The notes: a model not told the origin generated them from the letters alone. A stretch of DNA of 64,000 bases from Macrostomum lignano (GCA_002269645.1 NIVC01000633.1:1-64000), one strand, 5' to 3'; positions 1 through 61,144 are shown, counted from the first letter of the stretch. Numbers and translations: made by a program.

Positions 1-3000
1 TGCCTGCAGGACACGGTTTAGCGCTTGTCGAGCCAGTCTTGTCGACGAATGATCCCGGTGGACTCGGTGTACACTTGCTAGATCCGGCGATCGCAAACGT
101 TCCCGCCTTGCACTTGGTCGGCTCGGAGGCGCCGTTGGTACACACGCTTCCAGCAGGACACTTGGTGCATTCCTTGGACCCCTTCTTGTTGGCGAAGCTA
201 CCCGGTGGACACTTAGTGCAGGCGCTTAACCCGGCTCGGTCAGCAATGCTTCCTGCCGGGCACTGGGTGCATGCCGAAGAGCCGACAGTTGAGATTGTTC
301 CAGGCTCGCAGTTCGTACACGCGGCCGCGCCTTTACCGCTCCACGTGCCTGCAGGACACGGTTTAGCGCTTGTCGAGCCAGTCTTGTCGACGAATGATCC
401 CGGTGGACTCGGTGTACACTTGCTAGATCCGGCGATCGCAAACGTTCCCGCCTTGCACTTGGTCGGCTCGGAGGCGCCGTTGGTACACACGCTTCCAGCA
501 GGACACTTGGTGCATTCCTTGGACCCCTTCTTGTTGGCGAAGCTACCCGGTGGACACTTAGTGCAGGCGCTTAACCCGGCTCGGTCAGCAATGCTTCCTG
601 CCGGGCACTGGGTGCATGCCGAAGAGCCGACAGTTGAGATTGTTCCAGGCTCGCAGTTCGTACACGCGGCCGCGCCTTTACCGCTCCACGTGCCTGCAGG
701 ACACGGTTTAGCGCTTGTCGAGCCAGTCTTGTCGACGAATGATCCCGGTGGACTCGGTGTACACTTGCTAGATCCGGCGATCGCAAACGTTCCCGCCTTG
801 CACTTGGTCGGCTCGGAGGCGCCGTTGGTACACACGCTTCCAGCAGGACACTTGGTGCATTCCTTGGACCCCTTCTTGTTGGCGAAGCTACCCGGTGGAC
901 ACTTAGTGCAGGCGCTTAACCCGGCTCGGTCAGCAATGCTTCCTGCCGGGCACTGGGTGCATGCCGAAGAGCCGACAGTTGAGATTGTTCCAGGCTCGCA
1001 GTTCGTACACGCGCGCGCGCCTTTACCGCTCCACGTGCCTGCAGGACACGGTTTAGCGCTTGTCGAGCCAGTCTTGTCGACGAATGATCCCGGTGGACTC
1101 GGTGTACACTTGCTAGATCCGGCGATCGCAAAACGTTCCCGCCTTGCACTTGGTCGGCTCGGAGGCGCCGTTGGTACACACGCTTCCAGCAGGACACTTG
1201 GTGCATTCCTTGGACCCCTTCTTGTTGGCGAAGCTACCCGGTGGACACTTAGTGCAGGCGCTTAACCCGGCTCGGTCAGCAATGCTTCCTGCCGGGCACT
1301 GGGTGCATGCCGAAGAGCCGACAGTTGAGATTGTTCCAGGCTCGCAGTTCGTACACGCGGCCGCGCCTTTACCGCTCCACGTGCCTGCAGGACACGGTTT
1401 AGCGCTTGTCGAGCCAGTCTTGTCGACGAATGATCCCGGTGGACTCGGTGTACACTTGCTAGATCCGGCGATCGCAAACGTTCCCGCCTTGCACTTGGTC
1501 GGCTCGGAGGCGCCGTTGGTACACACGCTTCCAGCAGGACACTTGGTGCATTCCTTGGACCCCTTCTTGTTGGCGAAGCTACCCGGTGGACACTTAGTGC
1601 AGGCGCTTAACCCGCTCGGTCAGCAATGCTTCCTGCCGGGCACTGGGTGCATGCCGAAGAGCCGACAGTTGAGATTGTTCCAGGCTCGCAGTTCGTACAC
1701 GCGGCCGCGCCTTTACCGCTCCACGTGCCTGCAGGACACGGTTTAGCGCTTGTCGAGCCAGTCTTGTCGACGAATGATCCCGGTGGACTCGGTGTACACT
1801 TGCTAGATCCGGCGATCGCAAACGTTCCCGCCTTGCACTTGGTCGGCTCGGAGGCGCCGTTGGTACACACGCTTCCAGCAGGACACTTGGTGCATTCCTT
1901 GGACCCCTTCTTGTTGGCGAAGCTACCCGGTGGACACTTAGTGCAGGCGCTTAACCCGGCTCGGTCAGCAATGCTTCCTGCCGGGCACTGGGTGCATGCC
2001 GAAGAGCCGACAGTTGAGATTGTTCCAGGCTCGCAGTTCGTACACGCGGCCGCGCCTTTACCGCTCCACGTGCCTGCAGGACACGGTTTAGCGCTTGTCG
2101 AGCCAGTCTTGTCGACGAATGATCCCGGTGGACTCGGTGTACACTTGCTAGATCCGGCGATCGCAAACGTTCCCGCCTTGCACTTGGTCGGCTCGGAGGC
2201 GCCGTTGTACACACGCTTCCAGCAGGACACTTGGTGCATTCCTTGGACCCTTCTTGTTGGCGAAGCTACCCGGTGGACACTTAGTGCAGGCGCTTAACCC
2301 GGCTCGGTCAGCAATGCTTCCTGCCGGGCACTGGGTGCATGCCGAAGAGCCGACAGTTGAGATTGTTCCAGGCTCGCAGTTCGTACACGCGGCCGCGCCT
2401 TTACCGCTCCACGTGCCTGCAGGACACGGTTTAGCGCTTGTCGAGCCAGTCTTGTCGACGAATGATCCCGGTGGACTCGGTGTACACTTGCTAGATCCGG
2501 CGATCGCAAACGTTCCCGCCTTGCACTTGGTCGGCTCGGAGGCGCCGTTGGTACACACGCTTCCAGCAGGACACTTGGTGCATTCCTTGGACCCCTTCTT
2601 GTTGGCGAAGCTACCCGGTGGACACTTAGTGCAGGCGCTTAACCCGCTCGGTCAGCAATGCTTCCTGCCGGGCACTGGTGCATGCCGAAGAGCCGACAGT
2701 TGAGATTGTTCCAGGCTCGCAGTTCGTACACGCGGCCGCGCCTTTACCGCTCCACGTGCCTGCAGGACACGGTTTAGCGCTTGTCGAGCCAGTCTTGTCG
2801 ACGAATGATCCCGGTGGACTCGGTGTACACTTGCTAGATCCGGCGATCGCAAACGTTCCCGCCTTGCACTTGGTCGGCTCGGAGGCGCCGTTCGTACACA
2901 CGCTTCCAGCAGGACACTTGGTGCATTCCTTGGACCCCTTCTTGTTGGCGAAGCTACCCGGTGGACACTTAGTGCAGGCGCTTAACCCAGCTCGATCAGC

Positions 3001-6000
3001 AATGCTTCCTGCCGGGCACTGGGTGCATGCCGAAGAGCCGACAGTTGAGATTGTTCCAGGCTCGCAGTTCGTACACGCGGCCGCGCCTTTACCGCTCCAC
3101 GTGCCTGCAGGACACGGTTTAGCGCTTGTCGAGCCAGTCTTGTCGACGAATGATCCCGGTGGACTCGGTGTACACTTGCTAGATCCGGCGATCGCAAACG
3201 TTCCCGCCTTGCACTTGGTCGGCTCGGAGGCGCCGTTGTACACACGCTTCCAGCAGGACACTTGGTGCATTCCTTGGACCCCTTCTTGTTGCGAAGCTAC
3301 CCGGTGGACACTTAGTGCAGGCGCTTAACCCGCTCGGTCAGCAATGCTTCCTGCCGGGCACTGGGTGCATGCCGAAGAGCCGACAGTTGAGATTGTTCCA
3401 GGCTCGCAGTTCGTACACGCGGCCGCGCCTTTACCGCTCCACGTGCCTGCAGGACACGGTTTAGCGCTTGTCGAGCCAGTCTTGTCGACGAATGATCCCG
3501 GTGGACTCGGTGTACACTTGCTAGATCCGGCGATCGCAAACGTTCCCGCCTTGCACTTGGTCGGCTCGGAGGCGCCGTTCGTACACACGCTTCCAGCAGG
3601 ACACTTGGTGCATTCCTTGGACCCCTTCTTGTTGCGAAGCTACCCGGTGGACACTTAGTGCAGGCGCTTAACCCAGCTCGGTCAGCAATGCTTCCTGCCG
3701 GGCACTGGGTGCATGCCGAAGAGCCGACAGTTGAGATTGTTCCAGGCTCGCAGTTCGTACACGCGGCCGCGCCTTTACCGCTCCACGTGCCTGCAGGACA
3801 CGGTTTAGCGCTTGTCGAGCCAGTCTTGTCGACGAATGATCCCGGTGGACTCGGTGTACACTTGCTAGATCCGGCGATCGCAAACGTTCCCGCCTTGCAC
3901 TTGGTCGGCTCGGAGGCGCCGTTCGTACACACGCTTCCAGCAGGACACTTGGTGCATTCCTTGGACCCCTTCTTGTTGGCGAAGCTACCCGGTGGACACT
4001 TAGTGCAGGCGCTTAACCCAGCTCGGTCAGCAATGCTTCCTGCCGGGCACTGGGTGCATGCCGAAGAGCCGACAGTTGAGATTGTTCCAGGCTCGCAGTT
4101 CGTACACGCGGCCGCGCCTTTACCGCTCCACGTGCCTGCAGGACACGGTTTAGCGCTTGTCGAGCCAGTCTTGTCGACGAATGATCCCGGTGGACTCGGT
4201 GTACACTTGCTAGATCCGGCGATCGCAAACGTTCCCGCCTTGCACTTGGTCGGCTCGGAGGCGCCGTTCGTACACACGCTTCCAGCAGGACACTTGGTGC
4301 ATTCCTTGGACCCCTTCTTGTTGGCGAAGCTACCCGGTGGACACTTAGTGCAGGCGCTTAACCCAGCTCGATCAGCAATGCTTCCTGCCGGGCACTGGGT
4401 GCATGCCGAAGAGCCGACAGTTGAGATTGTTCCAGGCTCGCAGTTCGTACACGCGGCCGCGCCTTTACCGCTCCACGTGCCTGCAGGACACGGTTTAGCG
4501 CTTGTCGAGCCAGTCTTGTCGACGAATGATCCCGGTGGACTCGGTGTACACTTGCTAGATCCGGCGATCGCAAACGTTCCCGCCTTGCACTTGGTCGGCT
4601 CGGAGGCGCCGTTCGTACACACGCTTCCAGCAGGACACTTGGTGCATTCCTTGGACCCCTTCTTGTTGCGAAGCTACCCGGTGGACACTTAGTGCAGGCG
4701 CTTAACCCGCTCGTCAGCAATGCTTCCTGCCGGGCACTGGGTGCATGCCGAAGAGCCGACAGTTGAGATTGTTCCAGGCTCGCAGTTCGTACACGCGGCC
4801 GCGCCTTTACCGCTCCACGTGCCTGCAGGACACGGTTTAGCGCTTGTCGAGCCAGTCTTGTCGACGAATGATCCCGGTGGACTCGGTGTACACTTGCTAG
4901 ATCCGGCGATCGCAAACGTTCCCGCCTTGCACTTGGTCGGCTCGGAGGCGCCGTTCGTACACACGCTTCCAGCAGGACACTTGGTGCATTCCTTGGACCC
5001 CTTCTTGTTGGCGAAGCTACCCGGTGGACACTTAGTGCAGGCGCTTAACCCAGCTCGGTCAGCAATGCTTCCTGCCGGGCACTGGGTGCATGCCGAAGAG
5101 CCGACAGTTGAGATTGTTCCAGGCTCGCAGTTCGTACACGCGGCCGCGCCTTTACCGCTCCACGTGCCTGCAGGACACGGTTTAGCGCTTGTCGAGCCAG
5201 TCTTGTCGACGAATGATCCCGGTGGACTCGGTGTACACTTGCTAGATCCGGCGATCGCAAACGTTCCCGCCTTGCACTTGGTCGGCTCGGAGGCGCCGTT
5301 CGTACACACGCTTCCAGCAGGACACTTGGTGCATTCCTTGGACCCCTTCTTGTTGGCGAAGCTACCCGGTGGACACTTAGTGCAGGCGCTTAACCCAGCT
5401 CGATCAGCAATGCTTCCTGCCGGGCACTGGGTGCATGCCGAAGAGCCGACAGTTGAGATTGTTCCAGGCTCGCAGTTCGTACACGCGGCCGCGCCTTTAC
5501 CGCTCCACGTGCCTGCAGGACACGGTTTAGCGCTTGTCGAGCCAGTCTTGTCGACGAATGATCCCGGTGGACTCGGTGTACACTTGCTAGATCCGGCGAT
5601 CGCAAACGTTCCCGCTTGCACTTGGTGGCTCGGAGGCGCCGTTCGTACACACGCTTCCAGCAGGACACTTGGTGCATTCCTTGGACCCCTTCTTGTTGCG
5701 AAGCTACCCGGTGGACACTTAGTGCAGGCGCTTAACCCAGCTCGATCAGCAATGCTTCCTGCCGGGCACTGGGTGCATGCCGAAGAGCCGACAGTTGAGA
5801 TTGTTCCAGGCTCGCAGTTCGTACACGCGGCCGCGCCTTTACCGCTCCACGTGCCTGCAGGACACGGTTTAGCGCTTGTCGAGCCAGTCTTGTCGACGAA
5901 TGATCCCGGTGGACTCGGTGTACACTTGCTAGATCCGGCGATCGCAAACGTTCCCGCCTTGCACTTGGTCGGCTCGGAGGCGCCGTTGTACACACGCTTC

Positions 6001-8195
6001 CAGCAGGACACTTGGTGCATTCCTTGGACCCCTTCTTGTTGCGAAGCTACCCGGTGGACACTTAGTGCAGGCGCTTAACCCAGCTCGGTCAGCAATGCTT
6101 CCTGCCGGGCACTGGGTGCATGCCGAAGAGCCGACAGTTGAGATTGTTCCAGGCTCGCAGTTCGTACACGCGGCCGCGCCTTTACCGCTCCACGTGCCTG
6201 CAGGACACGGTTTAGCGCTTGTCGAGCCAGTCTTGTCGACGAATGATCCCGGTGGACTCGGTGTACACTTGCTAGATCCGGCGATCGCAAACGTTCCCGC
6301 CTTGCACTTGGTCGGCTCGGAGGCGCCGTTCGTACACACGCTTCCAGCAGGACACTTGGTGCATTCCTTGGACCCCTTCTTGTTGGCGAAGCTACCCGGT
6401 GGACACTTAGTGCAGGCGCTTAACCCAGCTCGATCAGCAATGCTTCCTGCCGGGCACTGGGTGCATGCCGAAGAGCCGACAGTTGAGATTGTTCCAGGCT
6501 CGCAGTTCGTACACGCGGCCGCGCCTTTACCGCTCCACGTGCCTGCAGGACACGGTTTAGCGCTTGTCGAGCCAGTCTTGTCGACGAATGATCCCGGTGG
6601 ACTCGGTGTACACTTGCTAGATCCGGCGATCGCAAACGTTCCCGCCTTGCACTTGGTCGGCTCGGAGGCGCCGTTCGTACACACGCTTCCAGCAGGACAC
6701 TTGGTGCATTCCTTGGACCCCTTCTTGTTTGCGAAGCTACCCGGTGGACACTTAGTGCAGGCGCTTAACCCAGCTCGGTCAGCAATGCTTCCTGCCGGGC
6801 ACTGGGTGCATGCCGAAGAGCCGACAGTTGAGATTGTTCCAGGCTCGCAGTTCGTACACGCGGCCGCGCCTTTACCGCTCCACGTGCCTGCAGGACACGG
6901 TTTAGCGCTTGTCGAGCCAGTCTTGTCGACGAATGATCCCGGTGGACTCGGTGTACACTTGCTAGATCCGGCGATCGCAAACGTTCCCGCCTTGCACTTG
7001 GTGGGCTCGGAGGCGCCGTTCGTACACACGCTTCCAGCAGGACACTTGGTGCATTCCTTGGACCCCTTCTTGTTGGCGAAGCTACCCGGTGGACACTTAG
7101 TGCAGGCGCTTAACCCAGCTCGATCAGCAATGCTTCCTGCCGGGCACTGGGTGCATGCCGAAGAGCCGACAGTTGAGATTGTTCCAGGCTCGCAGTTCGT
7201 ACACGCGGCCGCGCCTTTACCGCTCCACGTGCCTGCAGGACACGGTTTAGCGCTTGTCGAGCCAGTCTTGTCGACGAATGATCCCGGTGGACTCGGTGTA
7301 CACTTGCTAGATCCGGCGATCGCAAACGTTCCCGCCTTGCACTTGGTCGGCTCGGAGGCGCCGTTCGTACACACGCTTCCAGCAGGACACTTGGTGCATT
7401 CCTTGGACCCCTTCTTGTTTGCGAAGCTACCCGGTGGACACTTAGTGCAGGCGCTTAACCCAGCTCGATCAGCAATGCTTCCTGCCGGGCACTGGGTGCA
7501 TGCCGAAGAGCCGACAGTTGAGATTGTTCCAGGCTCGCAGTTCGTACACGCGGCCGCGCCTTTACCGCTCCACGTGCCTGCAGGACACGGTTTAGCGCTT
7601 GTCGAGCCAGTCTTGTCGACGAATGATCCCGGTGGACTCGGTGTACACTTGCTAGATCCGGCGATCGCAAACGTTCCCGCCTTGCACTTGGTCGGCTCGG
7701 AGGCGCCGTTCGTACACACGCTTCCAGCAGGACACTTGGTGCATTCCTTGGACCCCTTCTTGTTTGCGAAGCTACCCGGTGGACACTTAGTGCAGGCGCT
7801 TAACCCAGCTCGATCAGCAATGCTTCCTGCCGGGCACTGGGTGCATGCCGAAGAGCCGACAGTTGAGATTGTTCCAGGCTCGCAGTTCGTACACGCGGCC
7901 GCGCCTTTACCGCTCCACGTGCCTGCAGGACACGGTTTAGCGCTTGTCGAGTCAGTCTTGTCGACGAATGATCCCGGTGGACTCGGTGTACACTTGCTAG
8001 ATCCGGCGATCGCAAACGTTCCCGCCTTGCACTTGGTCGGCTCGGAGGCGCCGTTCGTACACACGCTTCCAGCAGGACACTTGGTGCATTCCTTGGACCC
8101 CTTCTTGTTTGCGAAGCTACCCGGTGGACACTTAGTGCAGGCGCTTAACCCAGCTCGGTCAGCAATGCTTCCTGCCGGGCACTGGGTGCATGCCG
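1..8195 (-). repeat. Coding tandem array, 345-bp unit, ~23.7 copies in the window
   Basis: The unit recurs every 345 bp (e.g. ORF-track starts 6290, 6635, 6980, 7325, 7670, 8015). Each unit is 7 sub-repeats of 16-17 aa (17+17+16+16+17+16+16=115) with 12 Cys. Confidence 0.98.
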
Positions 8196-8880
8196 TTATG
8201 CCACTCGTGCTGTAAGAGCTGAATGTTCCTGGGTTGCAGACAATGCAGTTTTGATTTCCTTCTTGGTATTTGTAGCTTCCAGCAGGGCATGGCACGCAGA
8301 GGTTATTTGTTGTCACGCTTTTTTGATGGCCTACGGGACACCTTGGTATACAGTCATATCTTTGGCTACCTTTTTTATCATTAAAAGTTGGTGATTTGAT
8401 TTTGACGTTGCGACACTCTTTGCAGGCCATACTGTCGTATGGTTTATCGCAGTCAGTGCACTCTTTGTGACAATTAGGTTTGCAAATACCGTTTTTCAAG
8501 GTATAGTTTGCATTTTTGCATAGTTTTCTTTTTGTGACGACTAAGTTGAGAAAAGAAAAAACTTTGTAGCCTTTTCTAGAGTGCATCGAAAGTCTGGACA
8601 CGCGAGTTCGCTGGACTCCATGCACCGTGCTGTTAGGAGGCTTTTCTTCGTTTAAAATATTTCGCAAAAACTGTTGCGTCACAGTTTTTGGCAGTTTGTC
8701 TTTCAAGTTGGCGAAAGTTTCACGTTTGACCAGGGCCCCATCGGCGCCACCAGCTGCAGCGCCACCAGCTGCAGCGCCACCATCTCTTGGGTTTCGTTGC
8801 CCATATTCCGCTGTCGTCTTTCCGCTGGTGGCATCCAAGCTGAGGGTGAGCAAAATGAATGCCACTGACGCAAGTCTCAT
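1..8880 (-). CDS. Giant secreted cysteine-rich tandem-repeat protein (signal peptide, furin-like domain, GCC2/GCC3 ephrin-receptor-like repeats); 3' end lies outside the window
   Basis: ATG at 8880 in context cggaaaATGa starts MRLASVAFILLTLSLDATSG (hydrophobic signal peptide). It is followed by GGAAA repeats, LVKR and TKRK dibasic sites, CKPNCHKECTDCDKPYDSMACKECRN..CIPRCP (furin-like), then C-x-x-C-P-x-G-[ST]-[FY] repeats. The frame is open without a break from 8880 to ~6040, and the same peptide repeat continues across 1-bp indels to position 1. Recurrent differences between repeat copies are synonymous in this frame. Confidence 0.85.
8296..8520 (-). other. Furin-like / growth-factor-receptor domain IV-type cysteine-rich module
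   Basis: C..CH.EC..C..P.DS.AC.ECR..K..CIP.CP.G..(N)LC spacing resembles FU repeats of EGFR/PCSK-type proteins. Recognised by eye, no HMM run. Confidence 0.6.
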
Positions 8881-11800
8881 TTTCCGCAGTTGTCGGAAGT
8901 TGCAGATTGTTCCAGTTGATCGATTCACTGTTGTGTTTCTGAAGACTGAAGTTGTTTACGAGCTAGCTTAAAGGTACCGGAAAAGAACTACGTCTTTTAT
9001 TGCGATAAGTTCTTAGCAGAAAAAAAATTAAATTGAATAAATCGATTCCTACTGACTATCCCGCTAGCTGAGTTTCCTACAGCCAGTTTTTTTCCGATTT
9101 GAATTGCAGCAAAACTCGACAGGAATGTTGGACGCGGTCAAATTTCAAGTCGATCTGCGTTTTCTGCCGAACTTCTGTCTGCCAATAAGTTGCTTTTCCA
9201 ACGTTTTTTCTTTGCTGGTTGCCAGCGGAATATTTTTGAAACTTTTAACTACAAGTTTATTGAAATTCCAAAGGTTTTTTTGTTTTATCTGTTTTTTAAT
9301 TTTTTTTATTTTCGTAGATTTTTTGCCTGGTATACATGTAAGTACAACTTTGGTGCATTGCATGATACTACATCGCGTGATTTTAGTAAGACCTTAGTAA
9401 TTTGTAGATTTTAGTAAGAAAAATAATGCGTGCAGTACGGAAAAAATACAATCGATATGATTTGGCTAGCCATCGGTTGAGTACGTGTACTCAGAAAACT
9501 GCATAGTCCAAGAATTCGATGACATCCGTCTTTACATGCCTCTAATGCATGTGCATGTTGACGGTTGATGGCCTTGTCTTGCTCCGCAAAGCAATTCTTG
9601 CTGGACCGCATGTAACACACGATGCATTATGGTAAATTCCTGCTAAATTTACATCCTGGTAGAACCTACACGAACCTACGTGAAATACAGATATTGTATA
9701 TTGTACTTACAGTACCCCGTATGCATTAAGCCTGTAATATCCACGAAATTAAGCTCTACGTGTCTACCAGTGCCATATTAGGGTGCTCTCCAGTACGTGA
9801 ACATGCAAAACTTTCTTTGCTGAGAATGCTGTATGGAATGTGGCTCAAAATCAACTAGTAAGGCTGTCGCGCATTCCATTGTTTGCGTAAATTTACAAAA
9901 GTTTCAACGTACGAGCGTACATATGAAACATGCATGAACACAGACAGCGCGTTAGTGTCCGGATTCTCAGGTACTAAATTTCTAAAACAATGAACAGAAG
10001 TTTTTAACTTAAGCTGTATTTCTATGGGTTGGTTAAAATTATTTTAATTTATTAGCTTCCGATTTTTGTCTCTCGATAGGAAGTCAGTTCTGTGGTGTAC
10101 ATGTAATTTACTCGTAATTTGTATACAGAAGTACTGAAGCATTATGCATGCATGTATACATAAAAGTGCAGATCGTTACAAACAAGGACTAAATCTTTGC
10201 TCGCATTGTCTTTGAACGTATATACTGTTGTATTTTTATTCATACTTTTCCATGTCTGTTATGTTTTCTGCTCCGACCTGGAGCTGCTACATTTAAGTAA
10301 GAAGGCAATGGTTCGCTTAAGCGGTTCGAGCTATCGTATTGCTCCGGTTGATTAACTCCTCTTGGGATTCATTTTGTAAAAACTTTATTATAAAATAATA
10401 GGTTGTGCCCTAGACAACAAAATATTGGGCTGCGGCATACTCTGTGTCTTCTCTGTTAATATACAACAATGGGAGATAATACATAAGGTACTAGAGGTAA
10501 ACAATAAGCAAAATCACGATATTTATCGTGATATCGTGTACCGTGTGTATAGACTTATTGTCACTATCGTTTAGCATACTCGACTAGAAGCATTGTTTAA
10601 CGCTTGTAGCTATATGAATCTGCCATACTTGTAGTTATAATAACATAGGCGCGGTTTTATATACTAAAGGCTTGTTTACTTGCCTTCTCTCTCCGCCTCA
10701 CTCCGCCACGGTTCTAGCTACGCCTTCGCCAGCCTCAGCCACGCCACTTCCACTGTCTGTTCGAGCTCGATCGCTACGAGCACCGCCACCGTACGTTCAC
10801 CGCCATCACTTCGTCACCGTTGCCTCAAACTCATCGACCCACTCTGCCTTCTACCATCTAACTTATTGTTGTGTAGCCGCCAGTGCATCGTTTGCGAATT
10901 CAACTAGTACTTTGACCTATCTCTGTTAACCGCCCAGGACGGAATTAATAATAGCAAACCTAACTGTCCTCTCATACGTTACAATAAACAAAGTCTGCGG
11001 CCATTGCCCGCATCAGTTGCCATTACTGCCAAGTGCTACCGCTACAGAATTGCCTCGGCCGTATTTGTCTTCGTCGATTATCGAGGCCGCCACATTAACA
11101 CAGAGCCCGTTGCATTAAAGCCCATTAAAGAACCAACTTAAAATTTACGCTTGTGTGAAATCGGCTGCTGAGCTGGATCGTAGACTTATTCAAATTAAAT
11201 AAATTAACCGCTACACCAGATAAGACTTCCGTCTTAATCGTCACATTATTATCACGTTATATCCAGCAAGCTTCAGCTGATATTTCACACCGTCAGATAT
11301 GAAATTTACAAGCAGTTAGAATTATTAGGAAAAAAGATATAAATAAATAATAAAAAAAATAAAGTTAATGTATGCTATTCATTTTGCTTCGTTTTAGGTA
11401 TTAGCTAGAAACATTTTTAATGCTACACCGGATTTAGTAAATGTACGAGTTTAATTTAAAACAGTACTATAAGGGCCGATCGGCTCTTCTGGAGGCCCCG
11501 TGGTAAATTCGAGGCTGTTTGAGCTTTCTGTGTGAGGTTGTGTGGGCGCACTCGCGGAGTCAGCTAGTTCGCGACTATGCGGCTATCTTACCAGTACGTA
11601 CCATATACCAAGTCGTCGACGGCCTCGACCGGCGACCTGCTCAATGCGACGGCGCCACTGTGATGAATAACCTTTGTTTCCTTTCCTGCAATTACTTTTT
11701 CTATAATTAAATATTTTTTATAAAGTGTAAATTTACAGTATGTGGTGAGAAAGTATAAGTATGTGGTGACTGCGGGCTGCAACACAAGTCATTATTAACA

Positions 11801-16153: not shown

Positions 16154-17392
16154 CTCTGGGACAGATGGGAGACTCTGGGACAGTTAATTAGACTCTGAGA
16201 CAGGTGGGGAGACTGGGGCAGTTAGGAGACTCTGGGGCAGGTGGGAGACTCTGAAACAGATGTAGAGACTCTGAGGCAGGTTGGGAGACTCTGGGGCAGG
16301 TGGGAGTCTCCGGGGCAGGGTGGGGACTCTGGGGCAGGTGGGAGACTCCGGGGTAGGTGGGAGACTCCGGGGCAGGTTGGGAGACTCTGGGGCAGGTGGG
16401 AGTCTCTGGGGCAGGGTGGGGACTCTGGGGCAGGTGGGAGACTCCGGGGTAGGTGGGAGACTCCGGGGCAGGTTGGGAGACTCTGGGACAGGTGGGAGAC
16501 TCCGGGGCAGGTGGGAGACTGAAACAGATGTAGAGACTCTGGGGCAGGTTGGGAGACTCTGGGGCAGGTGGGAGACTTCGGGGCAGGTGGGGACTCTGGG
16601 GCAGGTGGGGAGACTCTGGGACAGATGGGAGACTCTGGGACAGTTAATTAGACTCTGGGACAGTTAATTAGACTCTGGGACAGCTAATTAGACTCTGCGA
16701 CAGTTAATTAGACTCTGGGACAGTTAATTAGACTCTGGGACAGTTAATTAGACTCTGGGACAGTTAATTAGACTCTGGGACAGTTAATTAGACTCTGGGC
16801 CAGTTAATTAGACTCTGGGACAGTTAATTAGACTCTGGGACAAGTGGGGAGACTCTGGGACAGGTGGGGAGACTCTAGGCAGGTGGAGAGACTAGGGCAG
16901 TTAGGAGACTCTGGAACTCGTGGGGAGACTCTTGGGCAGGTTGGGAGACTCGGGCAGGTGGGGAGACTCGGGCAGGTGGGGAGACTCGGGCAGGTGGGGA
17001 GACTCGGGCAGGTGGGGGACTCTGGGGCAGGTGGGGAGACTCTGGGGCAGGTGGGGAGACTCGGGCAGGTGGGGGACTCTGGGGCAGGTGGGGAGACTCG
17101 GGCAGGTGGGGGACTCTGGGGCAGGTGGGGAGACTCGGGCAGGTGGGGGACTCTGGGGCAGCTGGGGAGACTCGGGCAGGTGGGGAGACTGGGGCAGGTG
17201 GGAGACTCTGGGGCAGCTGGGGAGACTCGGGAGGTGGGAGACTCGGGCAGGTGGGAGACTCTGGGGCAGGTGGGGAGACTCTGGGGCAGGTGGGGAGACT
17301 CGGGCAGGTGGGAGACTCTGGGGCAGCTGGGGAGACTCGGGCAGGTGGGGAGACTCGGGCAAGTGGGAGACTGGGGCAGGTGGGGAGACTCA
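16154..17392 (+). repeat. Composite G-rich intronic minisatellite (gggagactctggggcaggtg-type, plus a 20-bp gactctgggacagttaatta sub-array at ~16630-16840)
   Basis: Directly visible tandem units that switch family along the array, with many GGG runs. Confidence 0.95.
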
Positions 17393-17669: not shown

Positions 17670-18217
17670 GTAAACAAATTGGATGGTGACGATGTTACTA
17701 TGGTGTGGTTATTATTATTTTATACCTAATAAGTGTATTGTGTTGCAATATTATCTTGATGGACTCGATGTGCGCACTGGAGTTTTCATTACTGCCGGTT
17801 TTGAGGCGGTGCCGGGCGGTTAATCAGCTGTTGATTCTCAAGTGTTTCTCTGTCCATTCCGGTATTGCGCAGTGCCTCCGTCTGTCTGTATCAATTATAT
17901 GTATCGGCACTGGGCAGCTATCTATTTAATTTAGTCCACAAGCAGTGCCTTTTTTATTCGGCTCTGCTATAGTCCCGGCTGCCGCTTGATTCGCAGCCTC
18001 GCACCAGTGGTTTCTTACCGGTAATCGGTCTTCATCCGGCCTTGACCCTCGGTGTCGTGTTGTCTGTCTCACCCATTCAATAAGCGATTGTGAAGGCACT
18101 TTTTATTCATCCAATTGCCTGTCGGTGTCGGTCTTGACTGATTCTGGTGTTGCCGCGACAAGCAGGCTCGCAGAACCCGCAATGCATTCGCTATGCCGCG
18201 GCCGCGTCGAATTGCAG

Positions 18218-21200
18218 AGACAGTCGGCCGCATCGACAGACCGACAGTCGGAGGAGGACTCGGCCAGCTTAGCCTCCGCCGCTACCTACACTGTGCGCAC
18301 CGAGCCGCAGCTCCGGCCCGGTGGCACCTTCACATTGCGCAAGTCCCGGCTCAGACAGCCGACCCCGCTGCAGCCAGGCATGCCCATCTCCTCGGGCGCC
18401 TCCCAGCTGGCCAAGTCCACCCCGAACCTGTTGGCCGCCGAGGACAAGCCGCCCAAGGCCAGGCCTAAGCAGCCGCCGGCTTCCCTCTCCCCCGCTGATG
18501 GCACCCTGTCCAAGGCCAAGTCCCGCTCCGTCACCAGCCTGCCCGCCGGCCACCGCAGCCGAACGGTGCCGCCAGGCCGCAGTCCGATCTCGCCGAAGAA
18601 CTACCCGGTGCACAGTTGCACCGGCGCCGCCAGTCGCCGAGGCTCCGAGTCGCGCCACCCCAGCGGCGGCGGCAGCGGAGAGCGGATGATTGACGCGCCG
18701 CCGCGCATCGAGACTCGGGGCTCCCGGCAGCGCCAGCGTCAGCAGCAGTTGTACGGCACCAAGCCGCCTTGGGCCACGGACGAAGACTTCGAGGCTGACT
18801 GGACAACGTCCGCTCGGCCGTTTTATCCCGCTGGTGACGCTTCTTCTGCAGGCGGTAGCGGCGAGCCCGTGCGAATGCGCCGGCTGAAGGCGGCCCGCGA
18901 GCTGTACAAGTCTCCTCAAAGCCGCAGCCAGTACTCCGGCAGCGTTGACAACCTGCTCAGGCAGGCCGAGTCTGAGGCGGCCGTCTCGTCCTCGGCAAAC
19001 GCATCGACCTCGCCAAGCCCAACCAGGCAGAGTCCCTCCAGGCAGCAGCAGCATCTCAACAGGCGCAAGGCGCAGCAGCAGCAGCAGCACGGAAGAGCCG
19101 TCCCGACCTCGGAGACAACGGCCAGCCAAACGCCTCGCAGCCTGACGCGGAGCGAGCCGGACCTGCGGCGCTCCCTGTCCGATGACAGCCTCAACGGGGA
19201 GGAAGCTGCTGCTGTCAAACACGGTGACGAAGCTGGCGTCACGTGCGGAACTTCTCCGCCTGTCCGCAAAGCCAACGCGTCCACCGTTACCTCGCCCGTG
19301 CAGACGGAGGCTGCGCAGTCGGTGACGCACGCTACGCAGACGGTGCCAGACCCGCAGCCGTCCAGCCAGCAGCAGGCAGTCTCGCCTATGGGCGGCGGCT
19401 ACTCGACCAGCCTGCAGTTCTCTCCCCCCGCCGCCAAGCGCCAGACCTTCAACCGCACCAAGATGGCGCCTGGTCTCCGGCCGGCTGCGGACAAGAAATA
19501 CCAACCGGCGCCGCGGGTTCAGCCCTCGATCATTCGGCCAGCCAACGCTGGCAAGCAGCAGAGCAGGCAGCACAAGGCCGGCCGCGAGCCGAGCCAGAGC
19601 AACACGACCACCTCCGGCTACCGCAGCGGCGGCAGCTCGCCGCAGCGTCCGCCGCAGCTGGCGCCGCAGAAAATTCGGCACGAACGTCAGCGGAGCATGG
19701 ACGAAGACTCGCTCACCGAGGACGCCTCGGCGGACACGGAGTTTATTCGTCCGGAACAGGCGGCCAAACCTCGGCCGGCCGATGTCGTGGACGGCGCGCT
19801 CCGCCACCTGCAGGCCGGCCAGCAGGTGAGTTTCGTGCACGAAAGAAACAGCGCGGCGCACTTTGTGCTCACTCAGCCGGTCGATCAGGTGGTGGCTGCC
19901 TCCAGCAGCGGAGGAGACGCGCACACGGACAGCGCCAGTAGGGTTGGGCCCCTGCACCCGCCGGCTATTGCACACTTTGGCAGGCGATTGCGCACTCAGA
20001 ACTCTGCCGGCTCCCTTGACGAAGATGAGGCCGCGGTGGCCGAGAATTTAGCTCCCTCCTCTCACGATGGAACCTCGCAGGACGGCACCAGCCTGGAGGA
20101 TGAGGCGGCGGGGGCGGCCGCTACCGAGTACGGACACCAGCCGCAGGCGCAGCCAAGGCCGCCTCTGAAGATCGAGCACCCCTACAAGAAAGTGGTGCTG
20201 GTTCGAAAGCCGCAGAGGCACAGCAGCGGGCCCGGCTCAGATAAGAGCTTCAGCAACTCCAGCGATGTGATGGTCCTACCTGACAAGGTGCGCAAGGATC
20301 GCTCGGTGACTGATATCAATCTTGACGAGATTTTCGGCACCAGTCCCGCGCCCAGGCCCAGCGAGAAGCTGCCGGAGGACCACGAGGTGAACCAGCGCAT
20401 CCAGTACTGGCTGAAGAAGAACATCTACTTCCAGACCAGCGAGCCGGAGGCGGCTCAACACCAGCAGCCGGTAATGGAGGTGCTGGTGCAACAGGAGGAG
20501 GATGCTCCGGCATCGGAAGACCCAGCAGCTGGGCCTGTTGTATCCAGCGTGGAGTACCCGATACGCAAGTTTCAGCCGCTGAGGTTCGGCTACATCAGCC
20601 CCGGAGTGTCGCCCGCCGCGCCTGCCGAAACCGCCTCGGACGAAGACGCGGATGCTAACGAGGAGTTGGACGCTGAGCCCAGCTTTGAGGTGTTGATGCA
20701 CACGCTGATCTACCCAGAGCCCGACCGTCAGGCACGAGACGCCGCCGAGCAGCAGCAGCAGCAGCCAGAGTCGTTCTGGTACGCTGGGAACTCGTCGCCA
20801 AGGAATCTGTCCTACACCTACAATGCTGCGCCCAGCGACTCAAATCCCATTCGCACCGGGAAAGTGCGCGCACTGGCCAGCCGCTTCCAGGAGCAGCAGC
20901 AGCCAGCCGAGTCTCGAGCCGCCTACCATCAGCAGCTTCGCAGGACACCGGCGCCGCCTCAGCAGCAGCAGCAGCCACCGGCTCAGCCTTCATCATCGCA
21001 CGACGCCATCGTTAATCAGCTCCGCCGGTATCAGCAGCAAACTCAGCAGCAGCAGCAGCAGCAACCGCCGCCTTCGCAGGGACGGCCTCCGGTGACGTCG
21101 AGCTCAAAGCCGACAGCCAGCGGGTCGGACTCCAAGACGTTCTACTTTGGTGACAAGTCGCTGGTGAGCAAGCGCGAAGAGCGCGAACACTGGGCCAGCC

Positions 21201-21265
21201 GGTACTTCAATCGGCCCAATATTGAAATCATCGGCCGGCTGGGCACCGACACGGACGCCAGCCAG
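18218..21265 (+). CDS. Large (~1016-codon) exon encoding a low-complexity Ser/Pro/Gln/Arg-rich disordered region, probably the N-terminal part of the LIM protein
   Basis: ORF 18125-21274 has strong GC3 codon bias and ends at a cag|gtaaat donor at 21265 (phase 0). The phase-0 acceptor gaattgcag lies at 18217; an ATG at 18182 is an alternative start. Confidence 0.8.
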
Positions 21266-22581
21266 GTAAATTAAGGTCACGTGGTCAGTTCTAGCCTGTC
21301 AGATTAGCTAGCTTACGAGCATTGTCAAACATATCATTGTTGTCTGTGCATACGTTTCTTTGTCTTTCTCAAATGTTGCACTTACCTATCGTTGGTACTT
21401 TTGTGCCATCACACACCTGTCCTGAGAGTTTTATTCTGTGTGTAGTTTAGCTATATATGCATATACGATATTGCCTCACTGTGTTGACACCGCTGTCTGT
21501 CTCTACACTCTACTGTCATATCGATCAATGCGCAATAGCACTCAGTACCAGTGCGGACACGCCCTGTGCCTGAGCTGTCTACCTGTCCTTACTGTGCAGC
21601 AATACAATATTTTTGGGTGTGGCTGTGGTTATCCAAGCATACCCAATCTGATCAGGTCTCTGCATTCTGTCTTCTTTGTGGGCTGGCTTTACTAATTACA
21701 GGGACTTTTAATTAGCGTCCCGGTTTCTATTTTGTATTATCAAAGAAAGGAATGCGGCTTAGTGATTCATGGCTCGTGTATATAATTTATAGTAGTCTGC
21801 CTGTCTGCTACAGATTGCTGACGGCAGATCGGGGTGTCTGGTAGAATTCTTTCTTCAGCAATCTTTGTGTTCCAAATTCTCTCTGTCTGGGACTGTACAG
21901 TCGGATCCTCTCGCTGACTTCTTGCTCACGCCTCTCTGCCCTGCCGGATTAGATTGCGGGGAGTCGCTCTTGGCCTTCTGCAGTTCCCCGCGTTCATCCC
22001 TTTCTATCTTTTCCCTTCTCCCCTCCTCTTCCCCAATAAGTCGGGCCGTTCCCTGTGCCCCATCGGGGCCAGCAGTTATGACTCACTCAGGCCGCCAAGG
22101 CCTCTTAGCTTGCACTGCGCATTAGTAAGGGCTGGGCGCACTCGATGCTAGCGCGGTACCGACAGTGTGGTATTGCCCGCTTGTTATTTTACGATCGTAT
22201 GCTGATTCAAATTTTATTAAGTGCTACCTACCTCTCATTTGAGAGTTTGTATTGAAGTGCCTCTGTACGTGCGTACGAGGTATAGATGTGCGGTGTTGGC
22301 TGTTCAGTGCATTCCCGGGGTGCTCATTTCAGCCAAATCCCTAATACGCCCAAAACTTCCCTACACTGTCACTTCTCACGTACTGCAGGATCTGCTCTAC
22401 CCATATCTATGTGCATTGTTTGTTCTTAAGAAAACTTTACTGCAGCATTTTTTGGTTTCAATGCGCATTTGCGCACTACACTACTGGAATAAGTAGAAAT
22501 AATTGCGTTCTTTGTTCGGGAAAAAAGTTTTTTATTAGAACTTTTCCGACTCCGCTAGTATTGTGCTGATATAACTCGCAG

Positions 22582-22803: not shown

Positions 22804-23422
22804 GTGGGTGAAGGCCAGCGAATCCTGCCGGGCCATGCGCTGCGTCACGGATGTTGTCCATCTCTTAGTCCTTTAGCCCTTCCTTGCGCTTACCTCTTTT
22901 TTTACTTCTTTCCGTGTTGTCAACCGGACCAAACGCACAGACTCCGACGGACTGCCGAAGTCCACAGTGTTGTAAACTTTGCATTGCGGCTCCAGAATAG
23001 TTGCTGTTATTTAGCTTCTGGCTCTCCAGCACAGCTCTGAGTGTTTTCCTGCCTCTCCCACTATTTCAGCGCACTGACTAGGCGCCGGGATTTGCGAACT
23101 GGAGTTTGTCGGGTGCTCACAGACTCATTTCGGACACCTTGATATAATCGCAAAAAAATTACTTAATCGGAGTTTATCGTTTAACTGTACCTGAATTTTA
23201 TTGCCCCCCCCCCCAGGTGTTGCGGTGAAGCACAGATCACCTGAGGGAGCACAAATTGAAACTTTGCACCTTCAAAAAGTATTTATTATTTGCTGGCACA
23301 TGGTCAACCCTGCACCAATTTTCTCTGGGAAATGTTTCCAGCTGCCCAATTCATTTTTTAGACAATTGAAAATCGAGTCTTAATACGACTTTTAGCTGTT
23401 AAGATTCTGAGATTTTGTTGCA

Positions 23423-27731: not shown

Positions 27732-27734
27732 GAC

Positions 27735-27803
<69 letters not shown>

Positions 27804-27822
27804 CTAAGACAGACAGACACTA

Positions 27823-27899
<77 letters not shown>

Positions 27900-27902
27900 C
27901 TC

Positions 27903-27987
<85 letters not shown>

Positions 27988-27990
27988 CTA

Positions 27991-28079
<89 letters not shown>

Positions 28080-28082
28080 CTA

Positions 28083-28115
<33 letters not shown>

Positions 28116-28116
28116 C

Positions 28117-28147
<31 letters not shown>

Positions 28148-28172
28148 CTAAGACAGACAGACAGACAGACAC

Positions 28173-28215
<43 letters not shown>

Positions 28216-28240
28216 CTAAGACAGACAGACAGACAGACAC

Positions 28241-28305
<65 letters not shown>

Positions 28306-28312
28306 AAGACAC

Positions 28313-28357
<45 letters not shown>

Positions 28358-28425
28358 AAGACACACAGACAGACAGGCAGACAGACACTAAGACACTAAG
28401 ACAATAGGAGAGACAGACAGACAGA
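27732..28425 (+). repeat. (ACAG)n tetranucleotide array with cactaag interruptions
   Basis: Directly visible. Confidence 0.98.
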
Positions 28426-29730: not shown

Positions 29731-30415
29731 TTCGTGTCAGAAGATCTCTGTCGACTTGTGTCAGAGCCTCTTCGATTTGTGTCAGAGCCTCGTTGTTTTG
29801 TGTAAGATCTTTGTCAATTTTATGTCTGAGTTTCGTCGGTGTATGTCAGAGCTTTGCCGATTTGTGTCAGATCTTTGCCGATTTGTGTCAGGTCTTTGCC
29901 GATTTGGGTCAAATCGGTACCAATTTGTGTCAGATATTTTCCAGTTTGTGTAGATCTTTGCCGATTTGTGTCAGATATTTGTCAATTTTATGTCAGAGCT
30001 TCGTCGGTGTATGTCAGATCTTTGCCGATTTGTGTCAGATCTTTGCCGATTTGTGTCAGGTCTTTGCCGATTTGTGTCGAAGCTTTGCCGATTTGTGTCA
30101 GTTCTTTGCCGATTTGTGTGAGATCTGTGCTGATTTGTGTCAGATATTTTCCAGTTTGTGTCAGATCTTTGCCGATTTGTGTCAGTTCTTTGCCGATTTG
30201 TGTCAGTTCTCTGCTGATTTGTGTCAGATATTTTCCAGTTTGTGTCAGATCTTTGCCGATTTGTGTCAGATATTTTCCAGTTTGTGTGAGATCTGTGCGG
30301 ATATGTGTCCAATATTTGCCAGTTTGTATCAGAAATTCGTCGGTGTGTGTCAGATCTTTGCCGATTTGTGTCAGATCTTCGTCAGCTTGTGTAGGGCTTC
30401 GTCGATTTGTGTCAG
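29731..30415 (+). repeat. Intronic 21-bp minisatellite (gatttgtgtcagatctttgcc)
   Basis: ~32 diverged tandem units, ending ~170 bp before the LIM exon acceptor. Confidence 0.95.
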
Positions 30416-57955: not shown

Positions 57956-58001
57956 CCAAAGCATCGCGTTCGCACGCAGCTCCCCACCTGGATCCGCCCA
58001 G

Positions 58002-61126: not shown

Positions 61127-61144
61127 GTGAGAGTCAAGTTGTTC

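What the first reader, a model, noticed from the sequence alone, without database searches (positions are those of the whole stretch)
1..8880. Giant intronless secreted Cys-rich fibre protein built as a higher-order repeat
Seen: a signal peptide, a propeptide with LVKR/TKRK, one furin-like module, then at least 23.7 copies of a 115-aa unit. The unit is seven 16-17-aa C-T-x-C-P-x-G-[ST]-F sub-repeats with 12 Cys, 11 Lys + 1 Arg and 5 acidic residues (net about +7). The protein is at least ~2,950 aa and open-ended. Established: this sub-repeat pattern resembles GCC2/GCC3 (ephrin-receptor-like) modules found in extracellular proteins. Inference: a long, basic, disulfide-stiffened secreted rod, a candidate adhesive, mucus, egg-capsule or surface-coat component. 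I do not recognise it as a named gene.
Basis: partly seen in the sequence, partly recalled or inferred. Interest (0 to 1): 0.7.

Follow-up and report, generated by a model that had tools for sequence, protein, structure and literature searches.

The report
Giant repeat protein of flatworm prostate
The window holds the start and about 24 near-identical 115-residue repeats of a giant secreted cysteine-rich protein of the flatworm Macrostomum lignano; published in situ probes place its transcripts in the prostate gland cells, so it is a candidate seminal-fluid protein, not an adhesive or egg-shell protein.

Summary
The repeat is real: 23.7 copies of a 345-bp unit (99% identical) on the minus strand. 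They follow an ATG at 8880, a signal-peptide-like start and a 230-residue unique N-terminus. Each 115-residue unit has 12 Cys and net charge +7, and it matches Pfam Ephrin_rec_like (GCC2/GCC3).

As assembled, the frame is open for only 983 codons. From 6040 onward, 18 one-base indels break it. Fourteen sit on the five synonymous sites where copies differ, which points to consensus errors rather than decay.

The organism is M. lignano: a UniProt fragment carries the identical repeat and supplies a C-terminus with no membrane anchor.

Published in situ primers for Mlig-pro50 and Mlig-pro62 (prostate-limited, 'No Blast Hit') match every repeat copy exactly. A third pair, also scored 'prostate', brackets the unique N-terminus. 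The transcript models are Mlig000334.g5 (best ORF 2,952 nt, the window's ORF length) and g11 (12,312 nt, about 4,103 aa, about 31 repeats). Both are tail-specific.

So the gene and its expression site were already on record. What I found described nowhere is the protein architecture and the merging of two 'orphan' seminal-fluid candidates into one gene. The role in the ejaculate is inferred.

The parts
8881..8926 (-). 5' untranslated region, at least up to 8926
   Evidence: The forward in situ primer of RNA815_23926.c (GAATCGATCAACTGGAACAATCTG) matches 8903-8926 exactly and only once. No in-frame ATG lies upstream of 8880.
8821..8880 (-). Start codon and predicted signal peptide (residues 1-20, MRLASVAFILLTLSLDATSG)
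   Evidence: Translation and hydrophobicity scan. This is a heuristic; SignalP was not available.
8524..8820 (-). Cys-free basic segment, residues 21-119 (pI 10.8). It has dibasic sites LVKR (49-52) and TKRK (116-119) and is a possible propeptide.
   Evidence: The small paralogues carry R-G-K-R at the same relative place, a few residues before the first Cys. Cleavage is inferred.
8191..8523 (-). Unique Cys-rich region, residues 120-230 (13 Cys). Residues 190-224 (8209-8313) are a divergent Ephrin_rec_like module.
   Evidence: Pfam E = 2.1e-6 for residues 190-224. PDB hits to MST1 and the EphA4 cysteine-rich domain cover the same stretch. No Furin-like hit.
8261..8284 (+). Site of the reverse in situ primer of RNA815_23926.c. 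With 8903-8926 it brackets a 666-bp probe over the unique N-terminus.
   Evidence: Exact single match. The probe is scored 'prostate' and mapped to Mlig000334.g5 in Table S11 of PMC7336406.
1..8190 (-). Coding tandem array: 23.74 copies of a 345-bp (115-aa) unit made of seven Ephrin_rec_like-type sub-modules. It runs off the window at position 1.
   Evidence: TRF; copy-by-copy alignment; Pfam. Primers of Mlig-pro50, Mlig-pro62 and the forward primer of RNA815_7654.1 match 23-24 copies exactly, with forward primers on the minus strand.
5929..6040 (-). First frameshift (1-base deletion at 6040, second at 5987) and the resulting stop codon at 5929-5931, which ends the 983-codon ORF
   Evidence: ORF length 8880..5929 = 2,952 nt, the same as the best-ORF length listed for Mlig000334.g5.
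1133..5697 (-). Sixteen further single-base indels: 5697, 5626, 5615, 4713, 4708, 4667, 3633, 3331, 3290, 3237, 2678, 2645, 2250, 2206, 1613 (deletions) and 1133 (insertion)
   Evidence: Of all 18 indels, 14 lie on the five synonymous variable positions of the unit and the other 4 in G, C or T runs. Chance of that overlap: 1.7e-7 by position, 4e-20 by event.

Best explanation
This is the 5' three quarters of a gene for a giant secretory protein of the prostate gland cells of Macrostomum lignano. It is the source of the putative seminal-fluid transcripts Mlig-pro50 and Mlig-pro62 (transcript cluster Mlig000334; this locus is most likely g5).

Shown:
- The minus strand encodes a signal-peptide-like start, a basic Cys-free segment with two dibasic sites, a short unique Cys-rich region, and then near-identical 115-residue units built of Ephrin_rec_like (GCC2/GCC3) modules.
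- Transcripts from both the unique N-terminus and the repeat exist, and in situ hybridisation localised them to the prostate.
- A sister locus has an uninterrupted 12.3-kb ORF, about 4,103 aa. That fits 230 + 31 x 115 + 41 + 270 residues.
- The C-terminus known from a UniProt fragment has more Ephrin_rec_like modules and a 137-residue orphan all-beta domain, with no membrane anchor.

Inferred:
- The 18 frameshifts in this copy are assembly or polishing errors.
- After signal-peptide removal, and possibly convertase cleavage before the first Cys, the product is a roughly 400-kDa chain with about 400 Cys, all paired, and net charge about +240.
- It folds into a stiff disulfide-ladder rod. Scaling from the ~11 A disulfide spacing in MST1 gives roughly 200 nm.
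- It is packed into prostate granules and transferred with the ejaculate.
- There it most likely acts as a structural or cohesive component that binds anionic glycans on sperm or on the partner's antrum. It would be a scaffold or plug-like matrix rather than a signalling ligand.
For: - Repeat and composition.
- Coding strand: the Pfam Ephrin_rec_like hit is in the minus frame. 43 of 46 inter-copy substitutions are synonymous third-position changes in that frame.
- Species and C-terminus: P0001 (A0A1I8JM00) and P0126 (A0A1I8H4D0) share 66/66 residues with the unit, then continue to a C-terminus whose most hydrophobic 19-residue window scores only 0.86.
- Expression: Table S11 of PMC7336406 lists the primers and scores 'prostate' for Mlig-pro50, Mlig-pro62 and RNA815_23926.c. 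The primers match the window exactly. Predicted amplicons are 205, 243 and 666 bp, against listed probe lengths of 205, 243 and 714.
- Weber et al. 2018 define these as prostate-limited and list the two fragments as 'No Blast Hit'.
- Cluster Mlig000334 is tail-specific: read counts 0/0/0/49 for g11 and 0/0/0/193 for g5. Members g4 and g13 are up-regulated in octets versus isolated worms, padj 1e-4 and 0.015.
- The best ORF of g5, 2,952 nt, equals the window ORF. The best ORF of g11 is 12,312 nt.
- Small paralogues with the same layout (signal peptide, RGKR, Ephrin_rec_like modules, same C-terminal domain) are also scored 'prostate' or 'prostate;gonads'.
- Rod model: best PDB match is MST1 residues 1280-1849, E = 1.2e-34. 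That region carries a ladder of disulfides about 11 A apart (PMC10602792).
Against: - No protein-level evidence exists: no proteomics, and no proof of transfer to the partner.
- The in situ probes lie in sequence shared by all loci of the cluster, so expression of this particular copy is not separated from that of its paralogues.
- One probe from the 3' part (RNA815_7654.1) is scored 'prostate;testes'.
- As assembled, this copy cannot make more than 983 residues.
- Mlig-pro50 and Mlig-pro62 were not among the 18 candidates tested by RNAi, so there is no phenotype.
- The structural or cohesive role rests on composition and analogy only.
- The fold of the C-terminal domain could not be settled: pLDDT 53.6 and 36.3, best Foldseek E = 7e-3.
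Confidence: 0.6

Rival explanations
1. This particular locus is a decaying duplicate (pseudogene) of the intact paralogue Mlig000334.g11. The 18 frameshifts are real, and only a 983-residue truncated product, or none, is made from it.
For: Eighteen indels in 5.9 kb. M. lignano carries most genes in duplicate (PMC7336406), and an intact 12.3-kb ORF exists elsewhere. Identical deletions recur in several units, as unequal crossing-over could produce.
Against: 14 of 18 indels fall on the five positions where copies differ by a synonymous change to C. Each reads as that C variant with a CC or CCC run shortened by one base. The other 4 lie in G, C or T runs. Chance overlap is 1.7e-7. No stop-creating or other non-synonymous decay accompanies them: 43 of 46 substitutions are synonymous. 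The first 2.8 kb, next to unique sequence, is clean. That is the pattern expected when reads are placed badly deep in a repeat.
Confidence: 0.15
2. It is a component of the temporary adhesive, cement or shell-gland secretion, mucus, rhabdites or the surface coat.
For: It is large, Cys-rich, cationic and repetitive, like the adhesive protein Mlig-ap1. The tail region also holds adhesive organs and cement and shell glands.
Against: All three probe sets that match the window are scored 'prostate', not adhesive organs, cement glands or antrum, although those categories are used in the same table. Mlig-ap1 and Mlig-ap2 have KR regions, vWD, C-type lectin, EGF and TSP1 domains and no Ephrin_rec_like.
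Confidence: 0.04
3. It is a polyprotein or signalling seminal-fluid factor. The array is cut into many identical 115-residue (or smaller) peptides that act on the partner's physiology or behaviour, rather than serving as a structural rod.
For: Other M. lignano prostate transcripts change partner 'suck' behaviour. Dibasic sites are present in the N-terminal region. Many identical units would give a high dose.
Against: The unit has no R-x-K/R-R site, only one K-K within ANKKGSK. The modules run on without linkers, as in the continuous rod of MST1.
Confidence: 0.08
4. It is a non-coding satellite whose long ORFs arise by chance from GC-rich periodic DNA.
For: Long ORFs also occur on the plus strand across the array, up to 716 aa. 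The window is full of satellites.
Against: Only the minus frame gives a Pfam hit. That frame is continuous with a signal peptide and a unique Cys-rich region. Variation is synonymous in that frame. Sense-strand transcripts exist and were used as in situ probes.
Confidence: 0.01

Closest known systems
Mlig-pro50 / Mlig-pro62 (RNA815_7654.2/.3), putative seminal-fluid transcripts of M. lignano (Weber et al. 2018, PMC5977470); transcript models Maclig_37v3 Mlig000334.g5 and g11
   Same: Same gene family, and most likely the same locus for g5. The primers match every repeat copy exactly, the amplicon sizes agree, and the ORF length of 2,952 nt agrees. Expression is prostate-limited.
   Different: In the literature they are two separate 354- and 399-nt fragments with 'No Blast Hit' and no protein description. 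Here they are collapsed copies of one 345-bp coding repeat in a gene of about 4,100 codons.
Small M. lignano paralogues: Mlig024117.g1 (PAA70246.1, 455 aa), Mlig029370.g1 (PAA50063.1, 448 aa), A0A1I8H091 (372 aa), Mlig025175
   Same: Same layout: signal peptide, dibasic site just before the first Cys, Ephrin_rec_like modules, and the same orphan C-terminal domain (26% identity, conserved Cys and S-Y-G motif). In situ scores are 'prostate' or 'prostate;gonads'.
   Different: They have about 8 diverged modules instead of about 31 near-identical 115-residue units. They have a perfect R-G-K-R site, where the giant gene has LVKR and TKRK. One probe (RNA815_8281.1) is scored 'gonads' only.
Mlig005822.g1 (Mlig-pro42, 44, 58, 60, 69), the other 'GCC2 and GCC3 domain containing' prostate gene of M. 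lignano
   Same: Ephrin_rec_like / GCC2-GCC3 annotation and prostate-limited expression. Several 'separate' seminal-fluid candidates collapse into one gene.
   Different: It is a different gene: its primers do not match the window or L001 within 4 mismatches. RNAi of Mlig-pro60 gave no significant effect.
Chlamydomonas mastigoneme protein MST1 (PDB 8tx1), cysteine-rich 'SD' tandem
   Same: Best solved-structure match, E = 1.2e-34 over MST1 residues 1280-1849. It is a run of Ephrin-receptor-like cysteine-rich modules forming an extended extracellular rod with disulfides about every 11 A.
   Different: MST1 also has nine Ig-like domains and a hydroxyproline-rich polyproline helix, and it polymerises on cilia. 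None of these features is seen here. Its modules are diverged rather than 99% identical. The similarity is at the level of a shared domain, not orthology.
Mlig-ap1 / Mlig-ap2, adhesive proteins of the same animal (PMC6410801)
   Same: Very large, Cys-rich, repetitive secreted proteins of a tail gland. Mlig-ap1 is also strongly cationic and binds anionic sugars.
   Different: Different domains (KR regions, vWD, C8, TIL, C-type lectin, EGF, TSP1, LDL) and a different cell type, the adhesive gland.
Repeat-rich structural ejaculate proteins of other animals (semenogelins, rodent SVS2, insect mating-plug proteins); comparison from my own knowledge
   Same: Accessory-gland origin, tandem repeats, basic charge, and a proposed gel or plug role.
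   Different: No sequence relationship. Those proteins are cross-linked by transglutaminase or are disordered, whereas this one is a folded disulfide-rich module array. A plug role in M. lignano is untested.

Membership tests
Pfam PF07699 Ephrin_rec_like (= GCC2/GCC3 modules) | Profile score above the curated gathering threshold | tested here: met
   83.6 bits against a cut-off of 23.1, E = 8.2e-24, 8 stretches in residues 1-460. The overlapping related models NCD3G and TNFR_ELAPOR1_6th also pass.
Eph receptor tyrosine kinases | Ephrin-binding domain, fibronectin III repeats, transmembrane helix and kinase domain | tested here: not met
   Pfam finds no such domains in the N-terminal 460 residues or in the C-terminal fragment P0001. 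P0001 has no hydrophobic segment; the highest 19-residue Kyte-Doolittle mean is 0.86.
   No hit at E <= 10 for residues 1-188 or at E <= 1 for residues 1-230. Only Ephrin_rec_like matches, at residues 190-224.
M. lignano putative seminal-fluid proteins (criteria of Weber et al. 2018) | Prostate-limited expression by whole-mount in situ hybridisation | tested here: met
   The published primers of Mlig-pro50, Mlig-pro62 and RNA815_23926.c match the window exactly and their probes are scored 'prostate'. The in situ result comes from the literature. It is not locus-specific.
M. lignano putative seminal-fluid proteins (criteria of Weber et al. 2018) | Bioinformatic evidence of secretion (signal peptide) | tested here: inconclusive
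   The N-terminus has the n-, h- and c-regions of a signal peptide by hydrophobicity and the (-3,-1) rule. No SignalP run was possible.
Seminal-fluid proteins in the strict sense | Protein present in the ejaculate and transferred to the partner | not testable with these tools
   This needs proteomics or antibody work. None was found in the papers searched.
Proprotein-convertase-processed precursors | R-x-K/R-R consensus site after the signal peptide | tested here: inconclusive
   The small paralogues have R-G-K-R. The giant protein has only the dibasic sites L-V-K-R and T-K-R-K, without Arg at P4.
Flatworm temporary-adhesion proteins (Mlig-ap1/ap2 type) | vWD/C8/TIL, C-type lectin, EGF, TSP1 or KR regions, with expression in adhesive gland cells | tested here: not met
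   None of these domains is found. The expression score is 'prostate'. The defining features are taken from PMC6410801.
MST1-type mastigoneme filament proteins | Ig-like domain array plus a hydroxyproline-rich polyproline-II tail in addition to the cysteine-rich tandem | tested here: not met
   Only the cysteine-rich tandem aligns. No Ig-like or proline-rich region is present in the window part or in P0001.

The most novel reading that the evidence does not exclude
The protein self-assembles, or is laid down, as disulfide-laddered extracellular fibres in the ejaculate. This would be an animal counterpart of the mastigoneme-type rod. The fibres would anchor sperm or form a cohesive plug in the partner's antrum by binding anionic glycans, and so would take part in the sexual conflict over ejaculate removal (the 'suck' behaviour). 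Repeat number would then be a fast-evolving, selectable trait.
Probability: 0.15. Interest if true: 0.6.

Novelty: new member of a known kind. Interest (0 to 1): 0.35.

Why it matters
For researchers working on flatworm reproduction, this turns two 'orphan' seminal-fluid candidates, Mlig-pro50 and Mlig-pro62 (both 'No Blast Hit'), into one defined gene. Its product is a roughly 400-kDa cationic array of about 31 near-identical Ephrin_rec_like repeats with a signal peptide and a free C-terminus.

Together with Mlig005822.g1, which absorbs Mlig-pro42, 44, 58, 60 and 69, at least seven of the 76 listed candidates come from two Ephrin_rec_like genes. A family of small paralogues is also prostate-expressed. 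The catalogue of candidates is therefore shorter than it looks, and cysteine-rich rods are a recurrent part of the prostate secretion.

This gives a concrete target for RNAi, antibodies and ejaculate proteomics, using the unique 666-bp N-terminal probe and the predictable tryptic peptides.

It is also a worked example of how long-read consensus errors at sites that differ between repeat copies can truncate gene models. Here a 12.3-kb ORF is reported as 2,952 nt.

It is not a new kind of molecule. The domain is common, and giant repetitive secreted proteins are well known.

Tried and rejected
- Exact look-up of the 983-residue product in public assemblies found nothing on record.
- A homology search with the N-terminus plus one unit matched only the repeat part. 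Nothing matched the unique N-terminus.
- The C-terminal domain gave nothing useful:
  - A word-indexed search found nothing, not even its own parent protein, so absence in that tool is weak evidence.
  - The exhaustive HMMER search gave three hits, E = 1e-5 to 4e-4, to unrelated repetitive proteins that I judge spurious.
  - Pfam gave nothing at E <= 10.
  - Two AlphaFold runs on 3- and 5-sequence alignments gave pLDDT 53.6 and 36.3.
  - Foldseek on the better model gave no hit below E = 7e-3. The top hits were assorted beta-sandwiches (CUB, CBM32, F5/8 type C, fucose-binding lectins). I say only 'probably an all-beta sandwich'.
- I first suspected that the two 'GCC2 and GCC3' prostate transcripts of Weber et al. 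(RNA815_14562 and RNA815_18395) were this gene. Their primers do not match the window or L001, and they belong to Mlig005822.g1.
- Mlig-ap1 and Mlig-ap2 were rejected on domain content.
- The bacterial promoter/terminator scan is irrelevant for a eukaryote.
- Rfam and tRNA scans of the window were empty.
- Pfam on five other ORFs of the window gave nothing.
- Text searches for 'Macrostomum + ephrin', 'flatworm + Ephrin_rec_like' and the gene identifiers found no paper.
- All primer pairs of Table S11 were scanned against the window. Only the three sets reported here match.
Full report
**What is in the sequence**

Tandem Repeats Finder reports a single array at 1..8195 with period 345, 23.8 copies, 99% matches and no net indels. 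The longest ORF on the minus strand starts upstream of 8880 and ends at 5929.

From the first in-frame ATG at 8880 the translation reads as follows:
- MRLASVAFILLTLSLDATSG: one Arg, a 13-residue hydrophobic core, then small residues.
- A Cys-free basic stretch (residues 21-119, pI 10.8) holding LVKR (49-52) and TKRK (116-119).
- A unique Cys-rich stretch (residues 120-230, 13 Cys).
- The repeat, starting at 8190.

One unit is 115 residues with 12 Cys, 11 Lys + 1 Arg and 2 Asp + 3 Glu (net +7). It has 25% Ser+Thr and no N-glycosylation sequon. It contains seven P/K/E-x-G-[ST]-hydrophobic modules of 13-20 residues.

**Is it coding, and on which strand?**

Long ORFs exist on both strands of the array, so an ORF alone proves nothing. 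Four things single out the minus frame:
- Pfam Ephrin_rec_like scores 83.6 bits against a cut-off of 23.1 (E = 8.2e-24).
- The frame is continuous with the signal-peptide-like start.
- Of 46 substitutions between copies, 43 are third-position synonymous changes at five sites of the unit (positions 32, 38, 80, 134, 152), all to C.
- Published sense primers lie on this strand (see 'Expression' below).

**The broken frame**

Copy-by-copy alignment shows 17 one-base deletions and one insertion, the first at 6040. As assembled, the ORF therefore ends after 983 codons, and the rest of the array is read in shifting frames.

Fourteen of the 18 indels sit on the same five synonymous variable positions. 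Each can be read as the C variant with a CC or CCC run shortened by one base. The other four lie in short G, C or T runs. The overlap of indel and substitution positions has a chance probability of 1.7e-7 by position and 4e-20 by event. The 2.8 kb next to unique sequence is clean.

I read this as consensus or polishing error deep in a repeat. I give real decay of this copy about 0.15. A sister transcript model with an uninterrupted 12,312-nt ORF exists.

**Organism and the missing C-terminus**

The best database hits are two M. lignano UniProt fragments: P0001 (A0A1I8JM00) and P0126 (A0A1I8H4D0). Their first 66 residues are identical to the repeat. They continue with diverged Ephrin_rec_like modules and a 137-residue C-terminal domain ending ...IIIELAFFYKE. 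There is no hydrophobic tail, so neither a transmembrane nor a GPI anchor is indicated.

This C-terminal domain is shared at 26% identity, with conserved Cys and an S-Y-G motif, with small M. lignano proteins of 372-455 residues. Those proteins have the same layout: signal peptide, R-G-K-R, about eight Ephrin_rec_like modules, then this domain.

The domain has no Pfam match and no credible relatives outside M. lignano. AlphaFold models are all-beta but of low confidence. Foldseek gives only weak beta-sandwich matches.

The small paralogue Mlig024117.g1 has one 212-nt GT..AG intron before this domain. 'Intronless' is therefore shown only for the part of the gene in the window.

**Expression**

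Weber et al. 2018 (PMC5977470) list 76 prostate-limited transcripts as putative seminal-fluid proteins. Brand et al. 2020 (PMC7336406, Table S11) give the in situ primers and their mapping to the Mlig_37v3 transcriptome. I scanned every primer pair in that table against the window.

| Transcript | Primer match in the window | Predicted / listed probe | In situ score | Mapped to |
|---|---|---|---|---|
| Mlig-pro50 (RNA815_7654.2) | both primers, 23-24 exact sites | 205 / 205 bp | prostate | Mlig000334.g11 |
| Mlig-pro62 (RNA815_7654.3) | both primers, 23-24 exact sites | 243 / 243 bp | prostate | Mlig000334.g11 |
| RNA815_23926.c | one exact site each, at 8903-8926 (-) and 8261-8284 (+) | 666 / 714 bp | prostate | Mlig000334.g5 |
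| RNA815_7654.1 (1,668 nt) | forward primer in every repeat copy; reverse primer outside the window | not applicable | prostate;testes | Mlig000334.g11 |

For pro50 and pro62 the forward primers lie on the minus strand. The RNA815_23926.c pair brackets the unique N-terminus.

Further points from the same sources:
- In Weber's Table S1 the two repeat fragments (354 and 399 nt, about one unit each) are 'No Blast Hit'.
- In Brand's tables, cluster Mlig000334 (g4, g5, g6, g11, g13, g15) is 'Tail'-specific, with zero reads in the other three body regions.
- Members g4 and g13 are significantly up-regulated in octets versus isolated worms.
- The listed lengths are best-ORF lengths. The value for g5, 2,952 nt, is exactly 8880..5929. 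The value for g11, 12,312 nt (4,103 codons), fits 230 + 31 x 115 + 41 + 270 = 4,106.
- The small paralogues are scored 'prostate' or 'prostate;gonads', and one probe is scored 'gonads'.
- A second Ephrin_rec_like gene, Mlig005822.g1, accounts for Mlig-pro42, 44, 58, 60 and 69. Its primers do not match this window.
- Mlig-pro50 and Mlig-pro62 were not among the 18 candidates tested by RNAi.

**How it probably works**

The features listed under 'What is in the sequence' and 'Expression' are shown. The rest is inference.

With 31 units the precursor would be about 4,106 residues and 401 kDa, with 409 Cys and a net charge of about +244. The even number of Cys per unit fits complete intramolecular pairing.

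The closest solved structure is the cysteine-rich tandem of the Chlamydomonas mastigoneme protein MST1 (E = 1.2e-34). There such modules form an extended rod with disulfides about every 11 A. Six disulfides per unit would give roughly 6-7 nm per unit and about 200 nm in all. This is a rough scaling, not a measurement.

By analogy with the R-G-K-R site of the small paralogues, cleavage at TKRK just before the first Cys could remove residues 21-119.

A stiff polycationic rod from an accessory reproductive gland most plausibly serves as a scaffold or cohesive matrix. It could sit in the secretory granules and ejaculate, binding anionic glycans on sperm or on the partner's antrum. A signalling or polyprotein role is less likely because the unit lacks convertase sites.

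**Comparison and novelty**

The domain family is common, from protists to vertebrates. The gene, its transcripts and its expression site are on record.

In the papers I could search, I did not find any of the following:
- the protein architecture;
- the recognition that Mlig-pro50 and Mlig-pro62 are collapsed copies of one coding repeat;
- the link to a family of prostate-expressed Ephrin_rec_like proteins with a shared orphan C-terminal domain;
- the explanation of the truncated g5 model.

I rate this a new member of a known kind, of moderate interest to specialists in flatworm reproduction and seminal-fluid evolution.

Noticed in passing
window 30766-54847: A 24-kb satellite of a 23-bp unit (ATAGTGAATGCTGAAGACTCAAG), about 1,048 copies at 98% identity, with strong G and A excess on the plus strand.
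   Followed up: no
window 16154-17391, 23422-25095, 27732-28425, 29742-30415, 55545-56179, 57294-57958, 59433-60169, 61134-61534, 61946-62844, 63304-63905: About ten separate minisatellite or microsatellite arrays (periods 4-48 bp, including (GACA)n). Many create long spurious ORFs in several frames.
   Followed up: no
window 18125-21274 (+): A 1,049-codon ORF in a 67% GC stretch, rich in Ser, Pro and Gln, with no Pfam match. It could be a real single-exon gene for a disordered protein.
   Followed up: partly
window 60581-62014 and 62789-63247 (+): Two ORFs share a recurring motif, G-[GIV]-Y-E-N-x-P ... L-P-D-V-V, between minisatellite-encoded stretches. They may be exons of one gene. No Pfam match.
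   Followed up: partly
window 1-8880: Base composition steps: the repeat array is 60% GC (GC3 60%), the unique N-terminal coding part 46%, and the upstream kilobase 38%. Every synonymous difference between copies is a change to C. The C variants accumulate towards the 3' copies: copies 1-6 are mostly T/T/A/G at unit positions 32/38/80/134, while the copies from 1996 down to the window edge carry C wherever the site is not deleted. This suggests local homogenisation, perhaps GC-biased conversion.
   Followed up: partly
window 4720-8215 (+): Antisense ORFs of 452 and 716 codons run across the array. They have no domain match and are best explained as a by-product of periodic GC-rich coding DNA.
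   Followed up: yes
L001 10001-11580 (M. lignano NIVC01001256.1, gene Mlig024117.g1): The small paralogue has one 212-nt GT..AG intron (10941-11152) just before the orphan C-terminal domain. Primers of RNA815_18334 match it exactly and span the intron; the probes are scored 'prostate' or 'prostate;gonads'. The forward primer of RNA815_8281.1 (scored 'gonads') also matches exactly at 10285-10304, but its reverse primer does not, so that transcript comes from a sister gene.
   Followed up: yes
literature: PMC5977470 Table S1 and PMC7336406 Table S11: At least seven of the 76 'Mlig-pro' seminal-fluid candidates (42, 44, 50, 58, 60, 62, 69) derive from only two Ephrin_rec_like genes (Mlig005822.g1 and Mlig000334). 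The candidate list is therefore redundant at these loci.
   Followed up: partly
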